DNA of 64,000 nt, taken from assembly GCF_048593235.1 (NCBI RefSeq), contig NC_133620.1, positions 291,911,765 to 291,975,764 of the forward strand, given 5' to 3'. A program made the translations under genes and the position numbers. Positions 32,801 through 63,512 of this stretch are shown here, piece by piece. The notes beneath the pieces were generated by a model that saw nothing but the letters and a program-made list of their open reading frames with translations, ran no database searches and was not told the DNA's origin. This DNA is from Sminthopsis crassicaudata. Lineage: Eukaryota. Numbering within the stretch: position 1 is the first letter of the stretch; every line of letters begins with the position of its first letter.

Positions 32801-34858
32801 ATGGGGGCTTCAGGACTGGAGGCCCGAGTTGATGGACCTAACAGGAAGGGTTGCCTTTTGCTGGCTTCAGTAGGAGCTGCTGTGTTGGGGACTCTGCTGC
32901 TATCTGTACCCTTCACTGTCTTGGCTGTGCTGGCTCTGATGCCCCAAGAACAGGGGGGAAAGGTGAACATTGGCTGTTTGAGTCTCTTTCTCTAATCACA
33001 CTTTTCTTGTGGAGAACCTTTGTTTCTCTCTCTAGGTCCTGGTTTCTTTCTCAGTTTCTGTGTTTTCCTTTTTCCATCTGTGTGAAATATCTGGCATCCC
33101 TATATCCTTCTATGTGAGCATCAATAACACCCTCCTCCAATTTTCTTCATTCATGGTCTTATGCTTTTTTCCTGTGGCCTATACCTTCGACTTCTCTCTC
33201 TTTGAGCTATCAAAATTTGACGCCTTCCTTTCTCTTTTCACATTGACTCCAGTGACTCTCAGACCCTGGGAAATGTTGGGGGGAGTTGCTGGGGGAAGAA
33301 AATCTAAAGCTGAAAAATCTAATTCTTGGATCCAAGTGGAAGAGGAAGTAATGATGCCACGTTTGAACTTAAGTCATTGTCTCCTCATCCAGGTAGCTGA
33401 CCCTTCTGGTCCAGGAGGACAATTGCTGCAACAACTAGGTAAGGGTAATTCCTAGTGTCCAGATGTGGTCCCTTGGTCCTTTTCCCTATCCCTGTTCATC
33501 TCATGAACCCAAATATCTAGCTCATGATTTTTCAGAATCTTGACTATCCCAACCCTTCAATTTCCCCTCCCTCCCTGTCTTTCTCTCTAGGATTTCATAA
33601 ACTGCCAGTGGAGTCCAGATCAGATTTCAGTTCCATTCCTCCAGCTGCCCACCTCATAGGTAAGAGCTTGGATTTACCAGAGGATGTGGAGATGGGCTTG
33701 AACTTGGGAAGATTTGAAACAAACAGGGCTTTTTGTCTCTCCTTCCCTTTCCCTATTAGCTATCTTTTTCATTTGCCATTATCTTGTGTCCACACTCCTT
33801 AGTTGGTTCCTCAAACTTTTCATATTCTCTTCCCCACCCCACCCCATTCCTATTCTATATAGACATTCTTCCTATTTCCATTCTCAATTTTCCATTCATT
33901 TTTGTCTTAACTGTCCCAGGCTTATGCTAGCCTCTCACAGGTTCACTCTCATTCCTTTAGCATCCTGAATCTTGGCCTCCTGAGAACATCTAACCTAAAC
34001 TTGGAAAGGTGCCCTCTTCCATAAATCCAGATCTGAATTGTTATACCAAGACCTCTCTCTGGGATACACAAAATTCAGCTTTGAGTCCCTTAGACTGTTT
34101 AGAAACCTTCCCTTTCTCACCTCTTCCAACCCTCCCTGAATTTTCCAACCTTTTTCCCATCTTTTGAGCTTGTTCCTACTCTTGGTCTGATCAGCCACGG
34201 CTGGGCATACTGTAACTTGATTCTTAACATAGTGATGTCATTTTGGTCCTCTTCCAGACTGAAGAACAATAATCGACTGAGATTTCAATGCAACTTGCTT
34301 GATCCAGACAGAATCACTTAGCTCGGAAGCTGGTTCTTAAAGAGACAGTGTTCACCATTTCACCCCTATTTTTCTACAGGTGTCTCAAAATCAGCTCATG
34401 GACTGCACTGGGTGTCGGGACACGAGGAAGCATTTCTGAAGAGTGGAACACAATTCTTGGGGGATGAAGGGCTACTGGCCCTTCCTCAAGATGGAATTTA
34501 TTTCCTTTACTGTCATATTGGGTACAGGGGCCGAGCTCCCTCTGGTGGAGAACAGGCTCGCTCTCATAATCCAGGGGACCCTGGAGTTCCTGTCATCCTC
34601 AGCAGTTGGTTATATAGGGCTGGGGGAGCCTATGGATCAGGGGAGCCAGAACTGCTGCTTCAGGGGGCAGAGACTGTGACCTCTTCTGTGCGACAAAACA
34701 AGGGAGTTGAGCAGGGTACTTTGTGGTATGCCAGTGTAGGGTTTGGAGGATTGGTTCAGCTTCGAGGGGGTGAGAGGATCTATGTTAATGTCAGTCACCT
34801 AGACATGGTGGACTTCAGGAGGGGGAAAACATTCTTTGGAGCTGTAATGGTGGGATGA
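32801..34858 (+). CDS. LTB: Lymphotoxin beta; CDS join(32801..32962,33393..33438,33591..33659,34380..34858)
   Basis: Exon 1 encodes MGASGLEARV...LLLSVPFTVLAVLALMPQEQGGK (type II TM anchor). Exon 3 ends PAAHLIG. Exon 4 is the TNF-homology domain ending FRRGKTFFGAVMVG*. All introns are GT-AG, phases are consistent, and there are no internal stops. Confidence 0.97.
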
Positions 34859-39137: not shown

Positions 39138-40750
39138 TCAAAGAGCAATGATCCCAAAATAGACCTGGCCAGGCTCAGCTAAGTCAAGATGTTTTGGATA
39201 GTTGGTGTTAGAACTGAGCTTATCACCTTCTTCAAGCTGGAAGACACCCCCCAGGTAGGTTGGTTCATACCAGGGATTAGCTTCCCTAGCTTCTCTTGTT
39301 GCCTTCTGGCACGGACTCTTGATGGCAGCAAGAAGGTTGACTTTGTTTTGGTAGGACAGTGCAAACCGGGAGATGGTATGAGTGAGGTACAGGGGTTCAC
39401 TGGCACAATTCTCTCCCTTGAAAAGGAGCTGGGAGTAGACCAGGTAAAGTCCAGAGGCAGGTATCACCAGCTGATTGTCTCTCAGTTCCATGCCATTATT
39501 CAGGAGAGCATTGGCACTCCTATTCAACCACTGGAGCTGCCCCTCTGCCCTGGAATTAGCTGTTGGGAAGGAGGAAGAAAAAGTTAAATCCACATGCTTC
39601 TTTTGAGTTCCGTCTTCCACATTTTGTTCCCCACAACTTATTTCTAAAATTCAAGACATTCTTTGTGCCATATCCCTCAGGTTCTTTCCATCCCCATAGA
39701 ATCCTATCCTTTGAATTCTTTCTTTCATCTTCCAGTTCTAGCCATCCAGTTCATTTCCACCCTCTCCCTCTTCCTCCCCTCCTAATATTTCTTCTCCTAT
39801 AGGTTCTGTTTTATCCCCAAAGTTCCATATTGACTTAGCCCATTCTTTGATTCCAGGCCCCATTTGACCCCACTTCCAAAATTTCAGATTATTACCTATA
39901 ACATGAGCTACAGGCTTGCCACTTTCACTCTGACAAGATCCTAGAATGGGAGAGAAAAGAGGAGGAAATGAAAGTTTAAAACTGAACTTAAGCTCTCTTT
40001 CATTCCCCTTTGCCAACCCCCACCAAAATTCAGAGATGCTTCCTGTCCTCTAAGAACTGTTCCCTTATCCCGATTCCCAGCCTCAACCCAGATACATCCC
40101 ACTTGAAAATGAGGGTTTATGAGATTGGGATAGTAAACAAGGGATACTTACTGACTCTCTGTGTCAGAGGGTTCATGTCACGAAAGGCATCTTGCTCCTA
40201 GAGAAGAAAAAAGAAGAGGTTAATGATGAATTATGGACAAAAAGAGTTAAAAAGACAGAGGTCAGAACCTACACATGCCTCTCATAATTCTCATCTTGTC
40301 TCTTTTCTCTCTTATCTTTCTTCCTTATTTCATTTTTCTCTTTATATTTCCCCATTTATATTTCTATTTAGTTCTCCCCCTCCTTCTTCCTTTCCATCAT
40401 TCTTTTTCTTTTCTATTTTCATAATTGTAATTTCCCCATCCCTCTATTATTGTGTTTCTCCCTCTTTTTCTTTACATCCTTATCTCTCTTTCCCCATCTG
40501 TCCTGCCTTTCCCAATTCCTCTCTGTTCCTGTTTTTATGGCCAAGTATTTGTGAGGCATCTCACCTCTTCCTTCTGAGGTCCTATCACACCGAAGTGCAG
40601 CAGGCAGAAGAGAATAGTAGCCCCAGCAAGAAAAAGGAAGGAGGTAAGTGTGAGGCAGAGGCAGCGGCCAGGGCCTTGGGGCCCCCTTGCCTTCCTTTGG
40701 AGTGCCTCTTCTGCTAGTTCCACGTCTCGGATCATGCTCTCTGTGCTCAT
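39138..40750 (-). CDS. TNF: Tumor necrosis factor; CDS complement(join(39138..39559,39896..39940,40152..40197,40565..40750)), 232 aa
   Basis: Reads [17 protein letters not shown]...[13 protein letters not shown] / [15 protein letters not shown] / [15 protein letters not shown] / [14 protein letters not shown]...[10 protein letters not shown]. Exon sizes are 186/46/45/422 with GT-AG sites. Confidence 0.98.
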
Positions 40751-42581: not shown

Positions 42582-43431
42582 TTATAGTGCAAAGGCCCCC
42601 AAAAAGATACTACTAGGGGACTGTAGCAGGTGGGAGATACCGTCTGTATGAGTGGATAGCTGATCTCCCTGGGTGAGCAGGAACACAGCTCCCTGGTAGA
42701 CTGATTTCATCCAGGATCCTTGGGTCCCTTGGCACACAGACTTTTGAGCACTCAGGAGGGGTACATGAACTTGGTACTTGGTGGAGAAGAGGAGAACTTC
42801 ATGGCTCAAATAGAGTGGGGTGGGAGCAACCTGAGAACAACTGGCTCCTGAGAAGACAACTTGGGAGTAAATGAAGTAGAGGCCGCTTGAGGGGACCAAG
42901 AGGGAGTTGTTCCTTAGAGAAAAACCATGTCGGAGGAAAGCGTGATCTGTGCTTGCTCTCCAATGTATAAAGTCCTTCGCGCTGAGATCTCCTAGGGGAG
43001 AGACACAGAAGTCAGGGAATGTTATGGGACTGGGGAGAATAGATGTACAGGCCACTTGGGAGGAGAAATCTGGGAGCTGGTTGCTTGGGTCTGTGAGGGG
43101 AGTGAAGAAGGTAGAACATCTAGATTCTTACCAACAAGATGGGCAGCTGGTTTCAGAGTGTCTCTTATGAGGCTCTTCTGGCTGAACTGTTGAGCTGTCT
43201 GGAGTAGGGCTGGGCTAGATGAGTGAGAGTTATCAAGATTGAGAGCCCCCTATGAAAGAACATGGTTAAGAAGGTACCAGGGGGCCAAGATTTCTTTCTT
43301 GCCCCTTTAAGCTCTCAATCCCCAAATTATCCCCCAGTCCTGTTGCTTCTCACCTGAGCCTCTGGTGGCTGCAGCCAAAGTGCATGGAGGCTCAATGCCC
43401 CCAGGAGACATAGGACTCCAGATGAGGTCAT
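42582..43431 (-). CDS. LTA: Lymphotoxin alpha; CDS complement(join(42582..42991,43132..43249,43354..43431)), 201 aa
   Basis: Signal peptide [26 protein letters not shown], then ...[10 protein letters not shown], and a last exon ending [13 protein letters not shown] sites and phases 0/1 are consistent. Confidence 0.97.
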
Positions 43432-49230: not shown

Positions 49231-49618
49231 TTGAGTACATCACATGCACATGTAGGTCTCTGGTATATAGAACTATAGACTAAAAATTCTGGAAGGAGGG
49301 AGATGTCATAGGTGACAGAAACCACTCAGATGGAAAAAGGCAGAGTAGCGCTCAAGAATAAGATGGGGAACTATATTTTATTAGGAAATGAGTAGGAAGA
49401 AAAGGGACTTAGTGGTAGTAGCCTCCCACTACTGCTCCAGCTCAGCTTTTATGTCTAACCCACAACTTGTCCTCATTCAGGTCTCATCTTTTCCTACAGT
49501 TCCATACTCAATTTTTTCCTTATTCCAGGTCCCATATTTTGTCCTTATTCTCTGTTCTTATCTTGTGGTCTTCATTATTTATATCAAATGTACTCATTCT
49601 CTGTATTTTTCTTCCAGA

Positions 49619-50700
49619 TCATTTTAGGCCTTCTGCATATTGATTGAGGACCTGAGACAGAGCTGTCACAATTTCTATTACTTTTTCCCTTTCCTTAGCC
49701 TCAATTTGGCCCCCAAATCTCTGTAGGAATTTGTCAGAATGCCACACTAAACCTGATGGACCTCAAATATTTCCTTAAGGTTCTCCGATCTGTGGGTGGG
49801 GTTCCCTAGCTACTAGGGCTACTGCCATTGCCTCAGGATCCTTCCTCCCAAGGCAGTGCCAGGGTATAGCTCCCAAACACCAAAATCAGTTCCCTCTCTT
49901 GGTGAGGTCTCCCTTGGGCTTTGTCCTGTTACGGTTTCCCCTACAATGCCCCCTGGCTTCCTGGACCTTCTTAGTTCTGCTTTCCCTCAGCTCTTCCTTA
50001 GCCTGGGCTTGCACTTGGAATAGCTGACATTCATTTTCTTGTTGCCAGCAGTGGTAGGAGGCTCTCTCTGTTGCTTGTTGAGGTCGTTATTTCTGGGCAT
50101 GTTCTTGGGCCAGACATTCAGTCCATGCAGAGTAGGACTCATATTCTGGGGTATCTAAGGCAGCATCCTCATCACCTAAGGAACAATGGGTATATAAATG
50201 GAAAGGTTTAAGGAGGGAGAAGGAAGAGAAACAATAAGGTCAGAAGGAAGATAGTCAGGAGACAGATGAGAGGCAAAAGATATGGAGACAAAAAAAATTT
50301 AAGGGATAGGAATTAATGTGGAATAGCTAAATAATAAAAGATATGGAAAGTGGGGGAGAAGATGAACCACTGAACCACCATTTTACATTACTGTCTGACA
50401 CTTTCAAAGCTATCCTTCTAAGGGGTGGACTCATCATTAGGACCTTGAAGAAAAGCAGCATGCAGAATAGTATTCCCATGGCAGTCCTGGCAAGTGGGGT
50501 CAGCACCAAGTAGCAGTTGAAAGGTAGGGATATCATGGCAGGCACAGGCTTAATGGAGTGGTGGTGGTTTTCCAGTATCTAATATCTAGCCTTGGGTGGT
50601 GTTGAAAGAGGGATGAGCCTTGCTCAGATGTCCTGTAGAAAGATATCTTCCGAAACATGGCTCATGTCTATGTTGGTAAGAGGAAGAACCCATGGTGGGT
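49619..50700 (-). pseudogene. NFKBIL1: Disabled NFKBIL1 (IkBL): exon 2 remnant ~50435..50700 and exon 4 remnant 49619..50175; exon 3 not found
   Basis: Exon 2 reads MGSSSYQHRHEPCFGRYLSTGHL...GKPPPLH*ACACHD...GADPTCQDCHGNTILHAAFLQGPN (ankyrin region). Exon 4 reads ...ESYSAWTECLAQEHAQK*...AKEELRESR...N*FWCLGAIPWHCLGRKDPEAMAVALVARE...WHSDKFLQRF...VTALSQVLNQYAEGLK*. Stops lie at 50550-52, 50087-89 and 49886-88. Frameshifts occur near 50580-50612 and 49745-49795. The donor reads ATGAGT at 50434-50429. The position between LTA and ATP6V1G2 is syntenic. Confidence 0.92.
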
Positions 50701-51539
50701 ATTGGAAAAGAGAGAAAATAAAGCAATTAAAATTAGAAGAGAATATAAGCTGCATGCTGTCTTTTCCATACATTCTCCATATTTTTCCCACTTTTATACA
50801 CTTCTACCTTTCATTTTATGTCTTAAAATAAAAACTGTCTTCTCAAAACTTAAGTTCATCTGTCCTGTGGGGTACTGTGATAAGTAGCTATATAATTTTG
50901 GAATGGAGATAAAGTTATTTGGGGGCCTTTGAGCCAAAAAGTACAATTTTTTTTTCCTATTACATAGTTTTTCATTTTTCATTTTATCTTCCATTCCAAA
51001 TTCTCTCCCTCTCTTCAGTGCCACCTTAATCCATTGAAAAAGCAAGAAATTCGATACCCATTCATATATGAAGTCATACAAAACATATTTCTGCATTAGT
51101 CACGTTCAAAAAGTACAATAAAGAAGATTTGAGTCTCTTTTTAGTAGAGGAACATTGGGCTAGTGGCAAAACTTCAGAAAATGAGTTTTGTAATCACCTA
51201 ATTTGATAATAATCTGTCTACATATTGATATTTATATCTTATGAGTAGGCAGGGCCCAAGTCCTCCTTCAGGGCTACCTCAGGCTGGAGGCAGGAGAGAC
51301 CCCTGGGGCTGACCCAACTGACCAGGGATATTACCCTGCAAAGCCCTAGTAATGAGTAGGGTAGGACCTTACAGGGCAGCCCTTAAATGTGGTAGTCTGC
51401 TTTCTGGAGTGGGGGAAAATGACATCTATTTTCACTAACCTCGAACTGAAATTTAGTCTTTTCTTAACTAATTTTTAAATGTTATTCCGAAATAGCCAAA
51501 TAGGTCCGCCAGGCTCCAGATCTAGCCTAATCCCAATTG

Positions 51540-52210
51540 CATGACGGAAAGGAATCTGAGGGTCAGGTGAAAACACTGGGTCTCAGGCCCCGCACGCAGC
51601 CGCCTAGTAGGAGGGTTGGGGAATCTAGGCCCTCGATCGTTTTGCAGAAATCCTCGCAACACCAGGCCTAAAGCAGCAGTAAACTCTTGGCCTGAAGCTC
51701 GGTGGAGAGAAGATAGGACCTCTTAAATCTAGCTAAACTGTGCGGGAGTCCCGCCTCGGGCCAGAAGGAAAAAAGGCGGAAACAAATCGGAAAGGAGACA
51801 GGGAGAACAAAGCGGACAGCTACTACAACCGAGCTGTTCCGTCGTCAGTTCCGGACTAGCAACGCGGAGCACGAGACAAAGGTTCCGCTGGCCGGGGAGG
51901 AGTAGGGAAAGATGAGGGGCTTTACTCTTTGGCGCGGGCGTGAAATGGAGAAGCTTGAGTGAAGTAAGAGCAGTTTGCTGTGATTTCACCACCGACCGCC
52001 TTCGTTGGTTGGGCTGGGGTCTGGTCTTTTAAAATTAATTAAATAAATAAAGTAATTAAATTTAATTTGAGAGGAAAATGGGGTTTGGGGAGGGAGAAAA
52101 AAATCTGAAGAGAAATGAGCACGGGGAGGAGACCCAGAAAGGGCTGGCGGAAGGTGGAAGTGGGGAGAAATGAGAGAAATACAAACTGAGCAAAGGACCG
52201 CAAGGGAGGA
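51540..52210. promoter_or_regulatory. CpG-rich promoter-like patch at the expected NFKBIL1 5' end
   Basis: Roughly 30 CpGs by eye in ~670 bp against a CpG-poor background, with ETS-like TTCCGG/TTCCGC and GC boxes. Confidence 0.7.
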
Positions 52211-52444
52211 AGAGAGAGAAGAGAGGGAGGAGGAGCTCAAGGAGTCCTAGTTCTAGAATTCAAACCTGGCCTCAGACATATAATCGTTAATCATACGAAT
52301 TTACTTGGCTTTTTAAGGTTTGCAAAACGCTTTACAAATATTTCGTTTTTATCACAACAACTCTTGTAAGTAGATGCAATTATCTCCATTTTACAAATGA
52401 GGAAATAAGTAGGCAGAAGTAAAAATATCTCACACGGAAGGAAT

Positions 52445-53610
52445 TTGTGACCAAAGAACTAGAGGTCATTATTAATCACAAAATAGAAAATTTCATTTAT
52501 ATTAAGTTAAAAAGCTTTTGTACAAATAAACCTAATGCAGACAAGATTAGAAGGGAAGCAATAAACTGGGAAAATATTTTTACAGCTAAAGGTTCTTATA
52601 AATATATAATTGACTCTAATTTAGCCATGCTCCAATTGATAAATGGTCAGAGAATATGAACAGACAATTTTCAGATGATAAAATTGAAACTTTCTACCCA
52701 TATGAAAAGGTGCTCCAAATCATTGTTGATTAGAGAAATGCAAATTAAGACAACTCTGAGATACCATTATACACCTCTCAGGAAAAAATAATAAATGTTG
52801 GAGGGGATGTGGGAAAACTAGGACACTGATACATTGTTGGTGGAGTTGTGAACGGATTTTGGAACTATACTCAAAAATTATCAAACTGTGCATACCCTTT
52901 GACCCAGCAGTGCTACTACTGGGCTTATATCCCAAAAAAATACTAAAGAGGGGAAAGGGACCTGTGTGTGCCAAAATGTTTGTGGCAGCCCTTTTCGTAG
53001 TGGTTAGAAACTAGAAATTGAGTGCATGCCCATCAATTGGAGAATGGCTGAATAAACTGGTATATGAATGTTATGAAATATTGTTCTATAAGAAATGACC
53101 AACAGGATGAATACAGAGAGGCTTGAAGAGACATGGACTGATGCTGAGTGAAATGAGCAGAACCAACAACAATACTATATGATCAATTCTGATGGATATG
53201 GCTCTCTTCAACAATGAGAGAATCTGAATCAGTTCAAAGTGATCTGTGAACCAGCTACACCCAGAGAAAGAACATTAAGAAATGAGTATGGACCACAACA
53301 TAACATTTCCACTCTTTCTGTTACTGTTTGCATTTTTGTTTTTTCTTCTCAAGTTATTTTTACCTTCTAAATCTGATCTTTCTTGTGCAACAAGATAACT
53401 ATATAAATATGTATACATATATTGTATTTAATATATACTTTAATATATTTAACATGTATGGGATTACCTGCCATCTAGGGGAGGGAGTAGAGGAAAGGAG
53501 GGGAAAAGTTGAAACAGAAGTTTTTGTAAGGGTCAATGTTGAAAAATTACCCATGCATATGCTTTGTATAAAAAAAGCTATAATAATAATAGTAAAAGAA
53601 ATATCTCACA
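52445..53610 (+). mobile_element. Internally deleted L1 3' portion between the CpG patch and ATP6V1G2
   Basis: ORF2 pieces (IKLKSFCTNKPNA) and a 3'UTR matching the 22.2-kb L1. Confidence 0.85.
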
Positions 53611-54472: not shown

Positions 54473-55539
54473 ATGGCCAGTCAATCTCAGGGCATCCAGC
54501 AACTGCTGCAGGCTGAGAAAAGAGCAGCTGAGAAGGTGGCAGATGCCCGAAAGAGTGAGAGCCTTGGTGGGAAACTAACAGGGTTTTAGAAGGATTGGTC
54601 AATTTAATTACTAAGAGGAGTGATGGGGGATGGGACAGAAAAGTGGAATGTGAAGTAGCCTAAGATGCCAGCATTTCTTTAGAGATGTATAAGGAATTGA
54701 ACTACCATGGTGATCACGAAGGACTCTTTTGGTTGAAAGTGCCCTTTAAACTATCTTTCTGCAGCTGTTCTTCCCTTCTTTCACTCCAGGGAAGGCTCGG
54801 CGTCTGAAACAGGCCAAGGAGGAGGCTCAGTTGGAGGTAGAGCAATATCGTAGGGAACAGGAGCAGGAATTCCAGAGCAAGCAACAAGCGGTAAGATTTG
54901 GCGTGTATTGCATATTGGAAAACATTATCAGGGTAATTTCTCTAATGGTATGGGAACTTTAATGAGGGACATTAGCATTTTCAAATATTTTTGTGGAGGG
55001 AAGTCTCTCAGGAAAGCATAGAATTTATGAGGCAGTGTTTGCAGGTTTTTATATCTATTGTGGAAAATAGCAGTGGGCTAGGGTGGGAAATATAAAATCT
55101 TCCTGGGTCAGGTGATAATGTTGAAGTGGATGGGGAATTCAGTTTTTGGATTATGGGTCTTAATGTACATACTTCTCTCTGGGCCTCAATGGCTTTTATA
55201 GAATTTGCATAGTCTGTACATAAAAGAGTAATATTCATATTTGCGTCTTTTTTTTTTTTTTTTTTTGCTCTCTCTTCTTGTGGCAACCTCATATTCTGGG
55301 ACTCTGTTTCCTATTTCTCTTTTCCTAATGCTCCCACCCACCTTATCCTCTCTTCCCCAAAACAGGCCATGGGTTCCCAGGGGAACTTGTCAGCTGAGGT
55401 GGAGCAGGCAACTCGGCGCCAAGTACAGAACATGCAGAGCTCCCAGCAGCACAATCGTGAGTGTGTCCTGGCTCAACTCCTTGGCATGGTCTGTGACATC
55501 AGACCCCAGATCCATCCCAACTATCGGATTGCTGCCTAG
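54473..55539 (+). CDS. ATP6V1G2: V-ATPase subunit G2; CDS join(54473..54554,54790..54890,55366..55539), 118 aa
   Basis: Reads MASQSQGIQQLLQAEKRAAEKVADARK/RKARRLKQAKEEAQ.../AMGSQGNLSAEVEQATRRQVQ...HPNYRIAA*. GT-AG sites. AATAAA at 56335-56340. Confidence 0.97.
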
Positions 55540-57449: not shown

Positions 57450-58330
57450 GCCCGGTAAAACCTGGCCTACGCCGAGGTCACCTTGGCAACTGCGGCAGTC
57501 GTAGGACGCCGGGAGAACGTGCCGCCACTTCCGCGACCCATTCATTGCGTTCCAAGTGAAAAGCAGCGCTTTAAGCAAGCCTGACTGAAAAGCAAAGTAG
57601 GAGAAGAGAGTCCGGGCTAGTGGGATGGGAAGGTTCGCAAAAAAGAGAGCGTAAATCTCCCCTCACAACTTTGATTCGGAAGGCGGCGGGAGAACCGAAA
57701 AGAAATTCATAGTTTTCATCCAGTCAGGCGATCCAGAGGGCATCTCTCTAATGCGCGGGACGGTTGATTCGTAGGAGGTCCTCGAGCCTTGCTTCCTGTT
57801 CCTCGCGTCTGCGCACTGGTACACTGGAAAGAGTGGGGTGGAAAGGGGAGAGGGAACGCGGGGACCGGAAGTGGAGGCCGCTTTCGTCGGTCGCCGCCGC
57901 TGCCGCCACCAGACGCATTTCTTCCCCGCTCAGGTAAGCGGCGGCCACGGCCTTTATCCACATCCATCCATCCTTCTCTAAGCCCATTCGATAGCAAGGG
58001 ACCCCCAATATCCCTGCCGAGAGCGATGCTTTAGCCTCCTGGCCCCTGCGGGGCCGTTATTTCCGCCTCTTTTCCCGCCCCGCCCGCGAGGGAAGAACCC
58101 CCCCCAGGGGGGAGGGGATGGCCGGGAGCGAAAGGGGAGGACCCAAGATGGCGGCGGTGGCGCCATTGTGTCCCAGCCCCCGAGGCCCCTCTGGTAACCT
58201 CACGCGCTTTGTCGCCATCCTCCTCTTCCCCGCCGGCGGCCTTGCTCCAGTTGGAGAAGGTCGGGAGGGACACTGTCTCCTCTTTAGCCAGTATGTTTGT
58301 GGGGATCGTAACATACGGACAATGCAGAGC
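57450..58330. promoter_or_regulatory. CpG-island promoter of DDX39B
   Basis: High GC and CpG density. ETS cores (CACTTCCG ~57526, CCGGAAGT ~57865) and a YY1-type AAGATGGCGGC at 58145-58155. Confidence 0.8.
57865..57933 (+). other. DDX39B: Probable non-coding first exon of DDX39B
   Basis: Lies in a CpG island, begins near a CCGGAAGT ETS motif and ends at a strong donor CAG|GTAAGC at 57933/57934. The 5' end is approximate. Confidence 0.6.
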
Positions 58331-59127
58331 CTTATCTAAAGCCACACTACCCGTGGAGTCTTTTCTCCCGGTTCTTTGTAGAAGAGGGACAGGTCTCTGG
58401 GCCCCATGTCTGTAAATTACCAACAGGTTTCCTCCCCCTGATCCTCCCCAATGATTCAAGCCATTAAAATGTTGGAGGGGAAACGTGACCCTCTTAGTGA
58501 AGACCTCTCTTGTCTCCCCATCCTACTTCCCATTGATGAAGAACGTTTGCCTTTGACTTTAAGGTTCTCCACCTGTGGTAGGTCCCTGTTCAAGAGGGAC
58601 TTGGACAGACTGGGGCTTGAGTAACAACCAGCCACGTAGTGTGTTCGTCATGAGGCTAGAACTCTGCGAGCTATGAATATCATACCTTTGGTTGCTGCAG
58701 GTTTGGGGGGGGAGAAGTTATTTCTTCTATAAGTCGTTAGACATTAATGCTGATGCAGGCTTTGTTCCAGCTCCAGACCCTCCCTTTGATATATTAAAAA
58801 AAAAAAAAATTTCCTTAACTCTTTTGTAGTTCTAAATTTGTAGTTGATTCATACTATCATCAATTTCTTCTCTTTTTCTATTACTCGGGTTCCTACATGT
58901 GTTAACAAGCTTCAAATTCCCCCCCTCCCCCAAAAATTTACTTTTCTCTGTCCTCAAACCTCATTTTTGTATTCTAGCTTGTCTGTTTTTCTCTATCCAG
59001 AAGAAATAGCTCAAAAAATTTTAAAAGAGGGAGGTATATGGAAAAAACTGGAGGTTGGTGGGAATTTTTTTTCTTTTATCACCAGCTTGTTTCTCCCAAT
59101 CCTATCTTCCTTAGCTCTCAATTCTGA

Positions 59128-63512
<4,385 letters not shown>

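What the first reader, a model, noticed from the sequence alone, without database searches (positions are those of the whole stretch)
49619..50700. NFKBIL1 is a decayed pseudogene at its conserved MHC class III position
Seen in sequence: the exon 2 and exon 4 homologues carry stops at 50550-52, 50087-89 and 49886-88, paired frameshifts in both exons, and a GT>AT donor change. No AG acceptor is evident at the exon 2 start. Many expected Arg codons now read Cys, His, Gln or stop, and only about 4 CpGs remain in 1.1 kb, the pattern of methylation-driven neutral decay. All five neighbouring genes are intact, which argues against generally poor sequence quality. Established: NFKBIL1 is normally retained between LTA and ATP6V1G2 in mammals. 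Inference: lineage-specific loss (unitary pseudogene) or relocation of an NF-kB/splicing regulator embedded in the TNF cluster.
Basis: partly seen in the sequence, partly recalled or inferred. Interest (0 to 1): 0.8.

Follow-up and report, generated by a model that had tools for sequence, protein, structure and literature searches.

The report
Dead NFKBIL1 gene in dasyurid marsupials
The immune regulator gene NFKBIL1, kept from sharks to humans, is a broken relic at its usual place in this carnivorous marsupial, and the Tasmanian devil shares three of the breaks, so the gene died before the two lineages split.

Summary
On the minus strand at 50693-49619, between LTA and ATP6V1G2, lie the remains of NFKBIL1.

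- **Homology:** tblastn E-values against seven functional marsupial orthologues are 1e-57 to 1e-73 for the last exon.
- **Lesions in the ancestral frame (Dromiciops as guide):** three stops (TAA 50552-50, TAA 50089-87, TGA 49888-86), five frameshifting indels, a GT>AT donor (50434-33) and no AG acceptor before the first coding exon.
a 1,049-bp deletion (junction 50380|50379) has removed the middle coding exon.
- **Shared with the Tasmanian devil:** the syntenic devil locus (87-91% identical DNA) is also dead. It shares a +1 insertion, a -1 deletion, the TAA at codon 194 and the missing acceptor. Each lineage then added its own lesions.
- **Signs of neutral decay:** relic exons diverge as fast as flanking DNA, 19 of 21 CGN arginine codons are gone, and 25 of 104 universally invariant residues are replaced.
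- **No intact copy found:** searches of 5.8 billion protein clusters returned only the devil's 196-aa 'LOW QUALITY' fragment. A whole-genome search could not be run.
- **Transcription:** a retained CpG island and k-mer hits in small, probably RNA, runs suggest the relic is still transcribed.

Verdict: a real unitary pseudogene, apparently unreported.

The parts
50435..50693 (-). Relic of the first coding exon (human exon 2 homologue, ankyrin-repeat part); ATG kept at 50693-50691
   Evidence: tblastn to marsupial NFKBIL1 residues 1-88, E about 1e-19 to 1e-24; three-way alignment with Dromiciops exon L002:5001-5265 and devil
50694..50745 (-). Upstream of the first coding exon: the polypyrimidine tract is present but there is no AG acceptor (same in devil; Dromiciops has CAG)
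50614..50615 (-). 1-nt deletion between these bases (window lineage only)
50582..50582 (-). 1-nt insertion (extra T in GAT-ATT-A-GAT), shared with the Tasmanian devil
50550..50552 (-). In-frame TAA at ancestral Arg codon 48 (devil and bilby have Gln here)
50510..50511 (-). 6-nt in-frame deletion between these bases (window lineage only)
50433..50434 (-). Splice donor reads AT instead of GT (devil and Dromiciops keep GT)
50379..50380 (-). Junction of a 1,049-bp deletion relative to devil L001:~8999-10047. It removed most of the first intron between coding exons, the whole middle coding exon (human exon 3) and 26 bp of the next intron
49619..50176 (-). Relic of the last coding exon (human exon 4). 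The acceptor AG is kept at 50178-50177 and the original TGA stop at 49621-49619
   Evidence: tblastn E 1e-57 to 1e-73 to marsupial residues ~164-358; alignment
50087..50089 (-). In-frame TAA at ancestral codon 194, shared with the Tasmanian devil
50063..50064 (-). 24-nt in-frame deletion between these bases (window lineage only)
49886..49888 (-). In-frame TGA (AGA in devil and Dromiciops)
49802..49803 (-). 1-nt deletion in the G/C run, shared with the Tasmanian devil
49746..49763 (-). Window-only -1 (49763/62) and +2 (49747-46). Together with the shared -1 they bring the reading back into the old frame
49377..49382 (-). AATAAA polyadenylation signal of the old gene. The 3' UTR is 95.5% identical to the devil's
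51500..52250 (.). CpG island (o/e about 0.8) at the position of the island that lies between ATP6V1G2 and NFKBIL1 in Dromiciops and devil; presumed shared promoter, retained
54473..55539 (+). ATP6V1G2, three open exons, 118 aa (intact neighbour)
42585..42992 (-). LTA last exon with a complete TNF domain (intact neighbour)

Best explanation
This is the orthologous NFKBIL1 gene (I-kappa-B-like protein), dead in place: a unitary, non-processed pseudogene.

The gene lost function in an ancestor shared by this dasyurid-like marsupial and the Tasmanian devil, after that lineage separated from the bilby lineage. The earliest recognisable lesions are:
- a +1 insertion in the ankyrin-repeat exon;
- a nonsense codon at position 194;
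- a -1 deletion in the conserved C-terminal part;
- loss of the acceptor of the first coding exon.

Which of these came first cannot be told. Afterwards both copies drifted neutrally, with CpG deamination removing nearly all CGN arginine codons. Each lineage also gained private stops, frameshifts and splice-site losses. In the window's lineage a 1-kb deletion removed the middle coding exon.

The CpG-island promoter region shared with ATP6V1G2 survives, so the relic is probably still transcribed as a non-coding RNA. That last step is inferred, not shown. No protein resembling NFKBIL1 can be made from this locus.
For: - Homology and synteny: tblastn hits and the gene order LTB, TNF, LTA, relic, ATP6V1G2, DDX39B. 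The same order holds in devil L001 and Dromiciops L002.
- Lesions in the ancestral frame.
- Shared lesions with an independent assembly of another species, at 87-91% DNA identity. The devil's own extra lesions are TAG at codon 6, exon-B acceptor AG>GG, TGA, TAG, -10, -2 and TGA.
- NCBI names the devil product 'LOW QUALITY PROTEIN', 196 aa.
- Neutrality since the split: devil-window identity is 0.891 for the first relic exon and 0.930 for the last, against 0.86-0.955 in adjacent non-coding DNA. dN/dS is 0.64 (bootstrap 0.38-1.24). Lineage-specific changes are spread evenly over codon positions: 10/12/11 and 12/7/6.
- Loss of constraint: 25 of 104 residues invariant in eight functional orthologues are replaced. 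The stem branch is 0.174 against 0.055-0.15 for functional marsupial tips.
- CpG decay: 21 CpG in the Dromiciops CDS against 4 here, mostly CG>CA/TG.
- Functional orthologues in seven other marsupials and echidna, and none intact in any dasyurid.
- Sequence reliability: 98-100% of sampled 31-mers over 49400-50900 are present in contigs of two samples from two studies.
- Dispensability is plausible: Nfkbil1 knockout mice are alive and were phenotyped (PMC4978889).
Against: - No read mapping could be done. The lesions private to the window, including the 1-kb deletion, therefore rest on the assembly plus k-mer shares. One of the two DNA samples may be the assembly's own source.
- The genome and transcriptome could not be searched for a second copy.
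- dN/dS between the two relics is below 1 in point estimate, although its interval includes 1.
- The ancestral states come from a single functional DNA outgroup (Dromiciops) plus protein sequences.
Confidence: 0.9

Rival explanations
1. Relocation or duplication: a functional NFKBIL1 copy, for example a retrocopy, sits elsewhere in dasyurid genomes, and the MHC copy decayed because it became redundant.
For: Not excluded. No whole-genome tblastn was possible, and the search of earlier findings by sequence was blank.
Against: A search with the bilby protein scored all 2132 candidates and returned seven other marsupials but only the 196-aa devil fragment for dasyurids. The search with the devil fragment found no further dasyurid protein. 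The annotated chromosome-level devil assembly is in that collection, as are Logan-assembled contigs.
Confidence: 0.05
2. Artefact: the stops and frameshifts are sequencing or assembly errors, or a null allele of the sequenced individual, and the gene is functional in the species.
For: Read mapping failed. One frameshift lies in a G/C homopolymer run.
Against: Three disabling lesions and the missing acceptor recur at the same positions in an independent assembly of a different species. There are more than ten lesions. 98-100% of 31-mers are held by two samples of two studies, and large shares by further small runs. 19 of 21 CGN Arg codons and a quarter of the invariant residues are replaced, which errors do not produce.
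Confidence: 0.01
3. Exapted relic: the protein is lost, but the transcript, or the conserved 3' end, is kept for a non-coding role in the TNF cluster. This is compatible with the main explanation.
For: - The CpG island is retained at 51.5-52.25 kb.
- The last-exon acceptor and AATAAA are intact.
- The 3' UTR and the 475 bp beyond it are the best conserved blocks between devil and window, at 0.955 and 0.940.
- Deakin et al. 2006 found a highly conserved element at the NFKBIL1 poly-A site (PMC1654159).
- Runs of only 74-850 million letters from four studies hold 0.63-1.00 of the last exon plus 3' UTR. That is far too little data for whole-genome contigs.
Against: - The runs are labelled only 'RNA? 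(a guess)' and could be capture libraries.
- The island may persist solely for ATP6V1G2.
- The identity differences among blocks are small.
- No strand, splice or abundance information could be obtained.
Confidence: 0.12

Closest known systems
Functional marsupial NFKBIL1 (Dromiciops gliroides P0071 / locus L002; bilby P0081; tammar P0072, 358 aa in three coding exons as in Deakin et al. 2006, PMC1654159)
   Same: Same position between ATP6V1G2 and LTA, same orientation, same exon phases. 59-64% amino-acid identity over the last exon when the relic is read through.
   Different: The window copy has three stops, five frameshifting indels, a dead donor, no acceptor for the first coding exon, and lacks the middle exon altogether.
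Tasmanian devil NFKBIL1 locus (GCA_048593225.1, L001:8678-10825; product KAM9002966.1 'LOW QUALITY PROTEIN', 196 aa)
   Same: An orthologous relic that shares the +1 insertion, the -1 deletion, the TAA at codon 194, two 3-nt deletions and the missing acceptor.
   Different: The devil still has the middle exon, itself broken by a lost acceptor, two stops and indels. It has its own TAG at codon 6, a -2 deletion and a TGA at codon 318. It lacks the window's TAA at codon 48, TGA at 49888-86, donor change, 6- and 24-nt deletions and 1-kb deletion.
NCR3 in the same MHC class III inflammatory region: a pseudogene in laboratory mice and undetected in opossum (Deakin et al. 2006, PMC1654159, citing Hollyoake et al. 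2005)
   Same: Lineage-specific death of a single immune gene inside an otherwise rigidly conserved gene cluster.
   Different: NCR3 is a young, fast-evolving receptor with paralogues. NFKBIL1 is single-copy, with orthologues recovered here from sharks, bony fish, amphibians, reptiles, monotremes and a snail-like homologue.

Membership tests
NFKBIL1 orthologue (by descent) | Significant sequence similarity to NFKBIL1 over the ankyrin-repeat exon and the conserved C-terminal exon | tested here: met
   tblastn E 1e-19 to 1e-24 (first exon) and 1e-57 to 1e-73 (last exon) against seven marsupial proteins. The C-terminal 47-aa piece retrieved NFKBIL1 proteins from 1.84 billion representatives.
NFKBIL1 orthologue (by descent) | Conserved position between ATP6V1G2 and LTA, transcribed towards LTA | tested here: met
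   Window map; the same order in devil L001 and Dromiciops L002.
Unitary pseudogene | Disabling mutations in the ancestral reading frame | tested here: met
   Three stops, five frameshifting indels, donor GT>AT, missing acceptor, and the middle exon deleted.
Unitary pseudogene | Not a processed copy: introns and flanks are those of the parental locus | tested here: met
   An intron remnant of 258 bp (50434-50177) separates the two relic exons. It is collinear with devil and Dromiciops DNA on both sides.
Unitary pseudogene | Functional orthologue in related lineages | tested here: met
   Full-length proteins in bilby, possum, koala, tammar, Dromiciops, opossum, wombat and echidna. The Dromiciops CDS was reconstructed exactly from its DNA.
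Unitary pseudogene | No functional copy elsewhere in the same genome | tested here: inconclusive
   No intact dasyurid protein in two database-wide searches. The genome itself could not be searched.
Unitary pseudogene | Fixed, not a private allele or an error | tested here: met
   Lesions shared with another species. 31-mers are present in several samples and studies. Read-level confirmation failed.
Unitary pseudogene | Neutral evolution after inactivation | tested here: met
   Relic exons are as divergent as their flanks. The dN/dS interval includes 1, and changes are even over codon positions. Invariant residues are replaced.
Transcribed pseudogene / lncRNA | A stable transcript from the relic on its own strand | tested here: inconclusive
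   Only word shares in small runs guessed to be RNA. No strand or splice data.

The most novel reading that the evidence does not exclude
NFKBIL1 was lost at or before the base of crown Dasyuridae, so every living dasyurid, the Tasmanian devil included, is a natural knockout of this negative regulator of NF-kB/TNF induction and partner in CD45 alternative splicing. The loss has measurably reshaped their inflammatory or anti-tumour responses, while the relic persists as a transcribed non-coding RNA inside the TNF cluster.
Probability: 0.12. Interest if true: 0.65.

Novelty: new member of a known kind. Interest (0 to 1): 0.45.

Why it matters
NFKBIL1 is a single-copy gene. From my own knowledge of the literature, not tested here, it dampens NF-kB-dependent cytokine induction and influences alternative splicing, and human variants are associated with rheumatoid arthritis and myocardial infarction.

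A clean, old natural knockout in a whole group of marsupials shows the gene is dispensable in a wild mammal lineage. That agrees with viable knockout mice (PMC4978889).

It also gives immunologists working on Tasmanian devils one more concrete difference in the TNF/NF-kB axis to take into account. Devils carry transmissible tumours, and dasyurids are reported to have high cancer prevalence (PMC12866920).

On the practical side, it corrects annotation. The devil 'LOW QUALITY PROTEIN' model is a read-through of a dead gene. I found no paper in the searchable library that links NFKBIL1 with dasyurids.

Tried and rejected
No read-level evidence was obtained.
- **DNA of more functional marsupial loci:** bilby, tammar and possum records have no DNA served. 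Koala, opossum and wombat isoforms are not on record. Only Dromiciops DNA was available, so branch-wise dN/dS and a proper dating of the inactivation could not be done.
- **Fetching transcript contigs through an ORF of the relic's 3' end:** not on record.
- **Searching earlier scan notes for a second copy:** nothing found.
- **CpG poverty as evidence by itself:** rejected, because the surrounding non-coding DNA is equally CpG-poor. Only the comparison with the functional CDS counts.
- **The extra TAG seen at about 49749-47 in the projected translation:** not counted, because it depends on where the 2-nt insertion is placed.
- **The 15-nt 'insertion' at 49908-49894:** present in both dasyurids and absent from Dromiciops. 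I read it as a probable Dromiciops deletion and did not count it as a lesion.
- **Dating:** two rough clocks disagree. Lesion counts give about 3-4 shared against 8-9 private per lineage. Replacements at invariant residues give 8-15 shared against 2-15 per lineage. I give only bounds.

Full report
**What is in the sequence**

The window is a marsupial MHC class III 'inflammatory' segment.
- Pfam finds complete TNF domains in the last exons of three genes: 34412-34858 (+), 39138-39620 (-) and 42582-43055 (-). These are LTB, TNF and LTA.
- ATP6V1G2 reads as three open exons giving 118 aa at about 54.47-55.54 kb (+).
- DDX39B starts at about 59.2 kb (+), with two SNORD83 copies in its introns.
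- Between LTA and ATP6V1G2, on the minus strand, lie two blocks that match NFKBIL1. Block 50693-50435 matches residues 1-88 of marsupial orthologues at E about 1e-19 to 1e-24. Block 50176-49619 matches residues about 164-358 at E 1e-57 to 1e-73.
- Deakin et al. 2006 (PMC1654159) describe an intact 358-aa, three-coding-exon NFKBIL1 at this place in the tammar wallaby and an opossum orthologue.

**Reference sequences**

A 47-aa stop-free C-terminal piece of the relic was searched against 1.84 billion representative proteins.
- It returned NFKBIL1 proteins. The best hit was a 196-aa protein at 80% identity, which NCBI names 'LOW QUALITY PROTEIN: NF-kappa-B inhibitor-like protein 1 [Sarcophilus harrisii]'.
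- Full-length searches recovered intact proteins of brushtail possum, koala, Dromiciops, tammar, opossum, bilby, wombat and echidna.
- I could fetch DNA for the devil locus (L001) and the Dromiciops locus (L002).
- The Dromiciops CDS was reconstructed exactly as three exons of 265, 228 and 572 nt. It serves as the ancestral-frame guide.

**Lesions in the window**

First coding exon (human exon 2):
- The ATG is kept.
- There is a -1 deletion at 50615/14, a +1 insertion at 50582, a TAA at 50552-50, and a 6-nt deletion at 50511/10.
- The donor reads AT at 50434-33.
- There is no AG acceptor in the 50 nt upstream, where Dromiciops has CAG.

Middle coding exon (human exon 3):
- It is absent. Relative to the devil, 1,049 bp are missing at the junction 50380|50379. 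The deletion took most of the upstream intron, the exon and 26 bp of the next intron.

Last coding exon (human exon 4):
- The acceptor is kept.
- There is a TAA at 50089-87, a 24-nt deletion at 50064/63 and a TGA at 49888-86.
- Frameshifts lie at 49803/02 (-1), 49763/62 (-1) and 49747-46 (+2).
- The original TGA is kept at 49621-19 and AATAAA at 49382-77.

**The Tasmanian devil shares the death**

- The devil locus has the same gene order and is 87-91% identical in DNA. The window therefore comes from a different dasyurid-like species.
- In the ancestral frame the devil copy shares the +1 insertion, the -1 deletion in the G/C run, the TAA at codon 194, two 3-nt deletions and the missing acceptor.
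- The devil's private lesions are TAG at codon 6, exon-B acceptor AG>GG, TGA and TAG inside exon B, +1 and -10 indels there, a -2 deletion, and TGA at codon 318.
- The NCBI model is a frameshift-corrected read-through of the last part.
- Shared lesions in two independent assemblies of two species exclude error or a private allele. They place the inactivation before the two lineages split.

**Evidence for neutral decay**

- Devil-window identity is 0.891 in the first relic exon and 0.930 in the last. Adjacent non-coding blocks range from 0.86 to 0.955.
- Pairwise dN/dS between the two relics is 0.64 (bootstrap 0.38-1.24). Lineage-specific substitutions are spread evenly over codon positions: 10/12/11 and 12/7/6.
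- Of 104 residues invariant in eight functional orthologues (six marsupials, echidna, a eutherian) and readable in both relics, 25 are replaced in one or both.
- The Dromiciops CDS has 21 CpG (o/e 0.27) and each relic has 4 (o/e 0.07-0.09).
- Of 21 CGN arginine codons, 2 remain Arg in each relic. The rest are mostly Gln, His, Cys or stop, the products of CpG deamination.
- The bare count of 4 CpG is no more than the regional background.

**Phylogeny and timing**

- A protein tree places the two relics together (100/100) as sister to the bilby (89/89). The stem is 0.174 substitutions per site and the tips 0.086-0.095. Diprotodont tips are 0.055-0.098 and the bilby tip 0.153.
- The loss therefore falls after the split from the bilby lineage, 48-64 Ma in the six analyses of PMC5715987. 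It falls before the devil/window split.
- If the window species lies outside the devil's tribe, as 7-13% neutral divergence suggests, that split is about 17-29 Ma on the same timescale. This is an inference.
- Two crude clocks (lesion counts, and replacements at invariant sites) disagree on how long before the split the gene died, so I give only these bounds.

**Is there another copy?**

- I could not search the genome.
- The bilby query scored all 2132 word-sharing candidates among 5.8 billion clusters and found seven other marsupials, but only the devil fragment for dasyurids.
- The devil-fragment query found nothing further.
- The collection holds the annotated chromosome-level devil assembly and many Logan-derived NFKBIL1 proteins, whose species the hit lists do not name. 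This argues against an intact, annotated or well-expressed copy but is not proof.

**Is the relic transcribed?**

- A CpG island (51.5-52.25 kb, o/e about 0.8) sits where Dromiciops and the devil have theirs, between ATP6V1G2 and NFKBIL1.
- Runs of only 74-850 million letters from four studies hold 0.63-1.00 of the sampled words of the last exon plus 3' UTR. One 99-million-letter run holds all of them but, by subtraction, next to nothing upstream of about 50176.
- Such small runs cannot assemble a random genomic kilobase, so they are probably RNA. Capture libraries are the other possibility.
- I rate transcription as likely but not shown.

**Reliability**

- Read mapping failed for procedural reasons.
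- Two DNA samples of two studies hold 98-100% of the 31-mers over 49400-50900, though one may be the assembly's source.
- The window-private lesions, notably the 1-kb deletion, therefore still need read-level confirmation. The pseudogene verdict does not depend on them.

**Known or new?**

- Full-text searches pairing NFKBIL1 with marsupial, Tasmanian devil, Sarcophilus, Antechinus, dunnart, dasyurid, pseudogene or gene loss found no report of this loss.
- A 2026 comparative study of dasyurid cancer susceptibility does not mention the gene in its main text.
- Nfkbil1 knockout mice are alive, so the loss is biologically plausible.
- This is a new, well-supported case of a familiar phenomenon. 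It is of moderate interest because the gene is old, single-copy, immune-related and embedded in the TNF cluster of a group that includes the Tasmanian devil.
- The same scan has flagged several other candidate unitary pseudogenes in this genome, one of them (LY6G6F) 133 kb away in the same MHC region. I did not test those.

Noticed in passing
window 57993-58190 (-), inside ORF 58031-58459 (-): The 71-aa N-terminal extension of opossum NFKBIL1 isoform X2 (P0077 residues 11-77) matches this stretch at 63% identity. It also matches devil L001:311-486. The stretch lies in the CpG island next to DDX39B, beyond ATP6V1G2. It is either a conserved upstream antisense exon or a chance ORF in GC-rich promoter DNA.
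   Followed up: no
window 60508-60583 and 62544-62622 (+): Two SNORD83 box C/D snoRNA genes in DDX39B introns (76.6 and 57.3 bits), as expected for this host gene.
   Followed up: no
protein P0081 (bilby), no window coordinates: Bilby NFKBIL1 is intact but has a long branch: 0.153 against 0.055-0.098 in diprotodonts. It carries Gln at several arginines conserved in other marsupials (codons 15, 22, 48, 188, 194). Constraint may already have been weaker in the common ancestor of bandicoots/bilbies and dasyurids.
   Followed up: partly
devil locus L001:2989-7911 (-): The devil annotation gives ATP6V1G2 a 205-aa product reaching into the CpG island, instead of the 118 aa seen in the other marsupial loci and readable in the window. 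This is probably an over-extended gene model.
   Followed up: no
hit lists: Among birds only ratites (ostrich, rhea, kiwi) gave NFKBIL1 hits, and these were short (252-278 aa) and about 30% identical. NFKBIL1 may be lost or highly diverged in other birds, or the word-based search may have missed them.
   Followed up: no
window 52423-53011 and 46.6-47.2 kb: Interspersed-repeat copies with many relatives elsewhere in the window lie between the CpG island and ATP6V1G2, and between the relic and LTA. They account for the wider spacing compared with Dromiciops.
   Followed up: no
   Followed up: no
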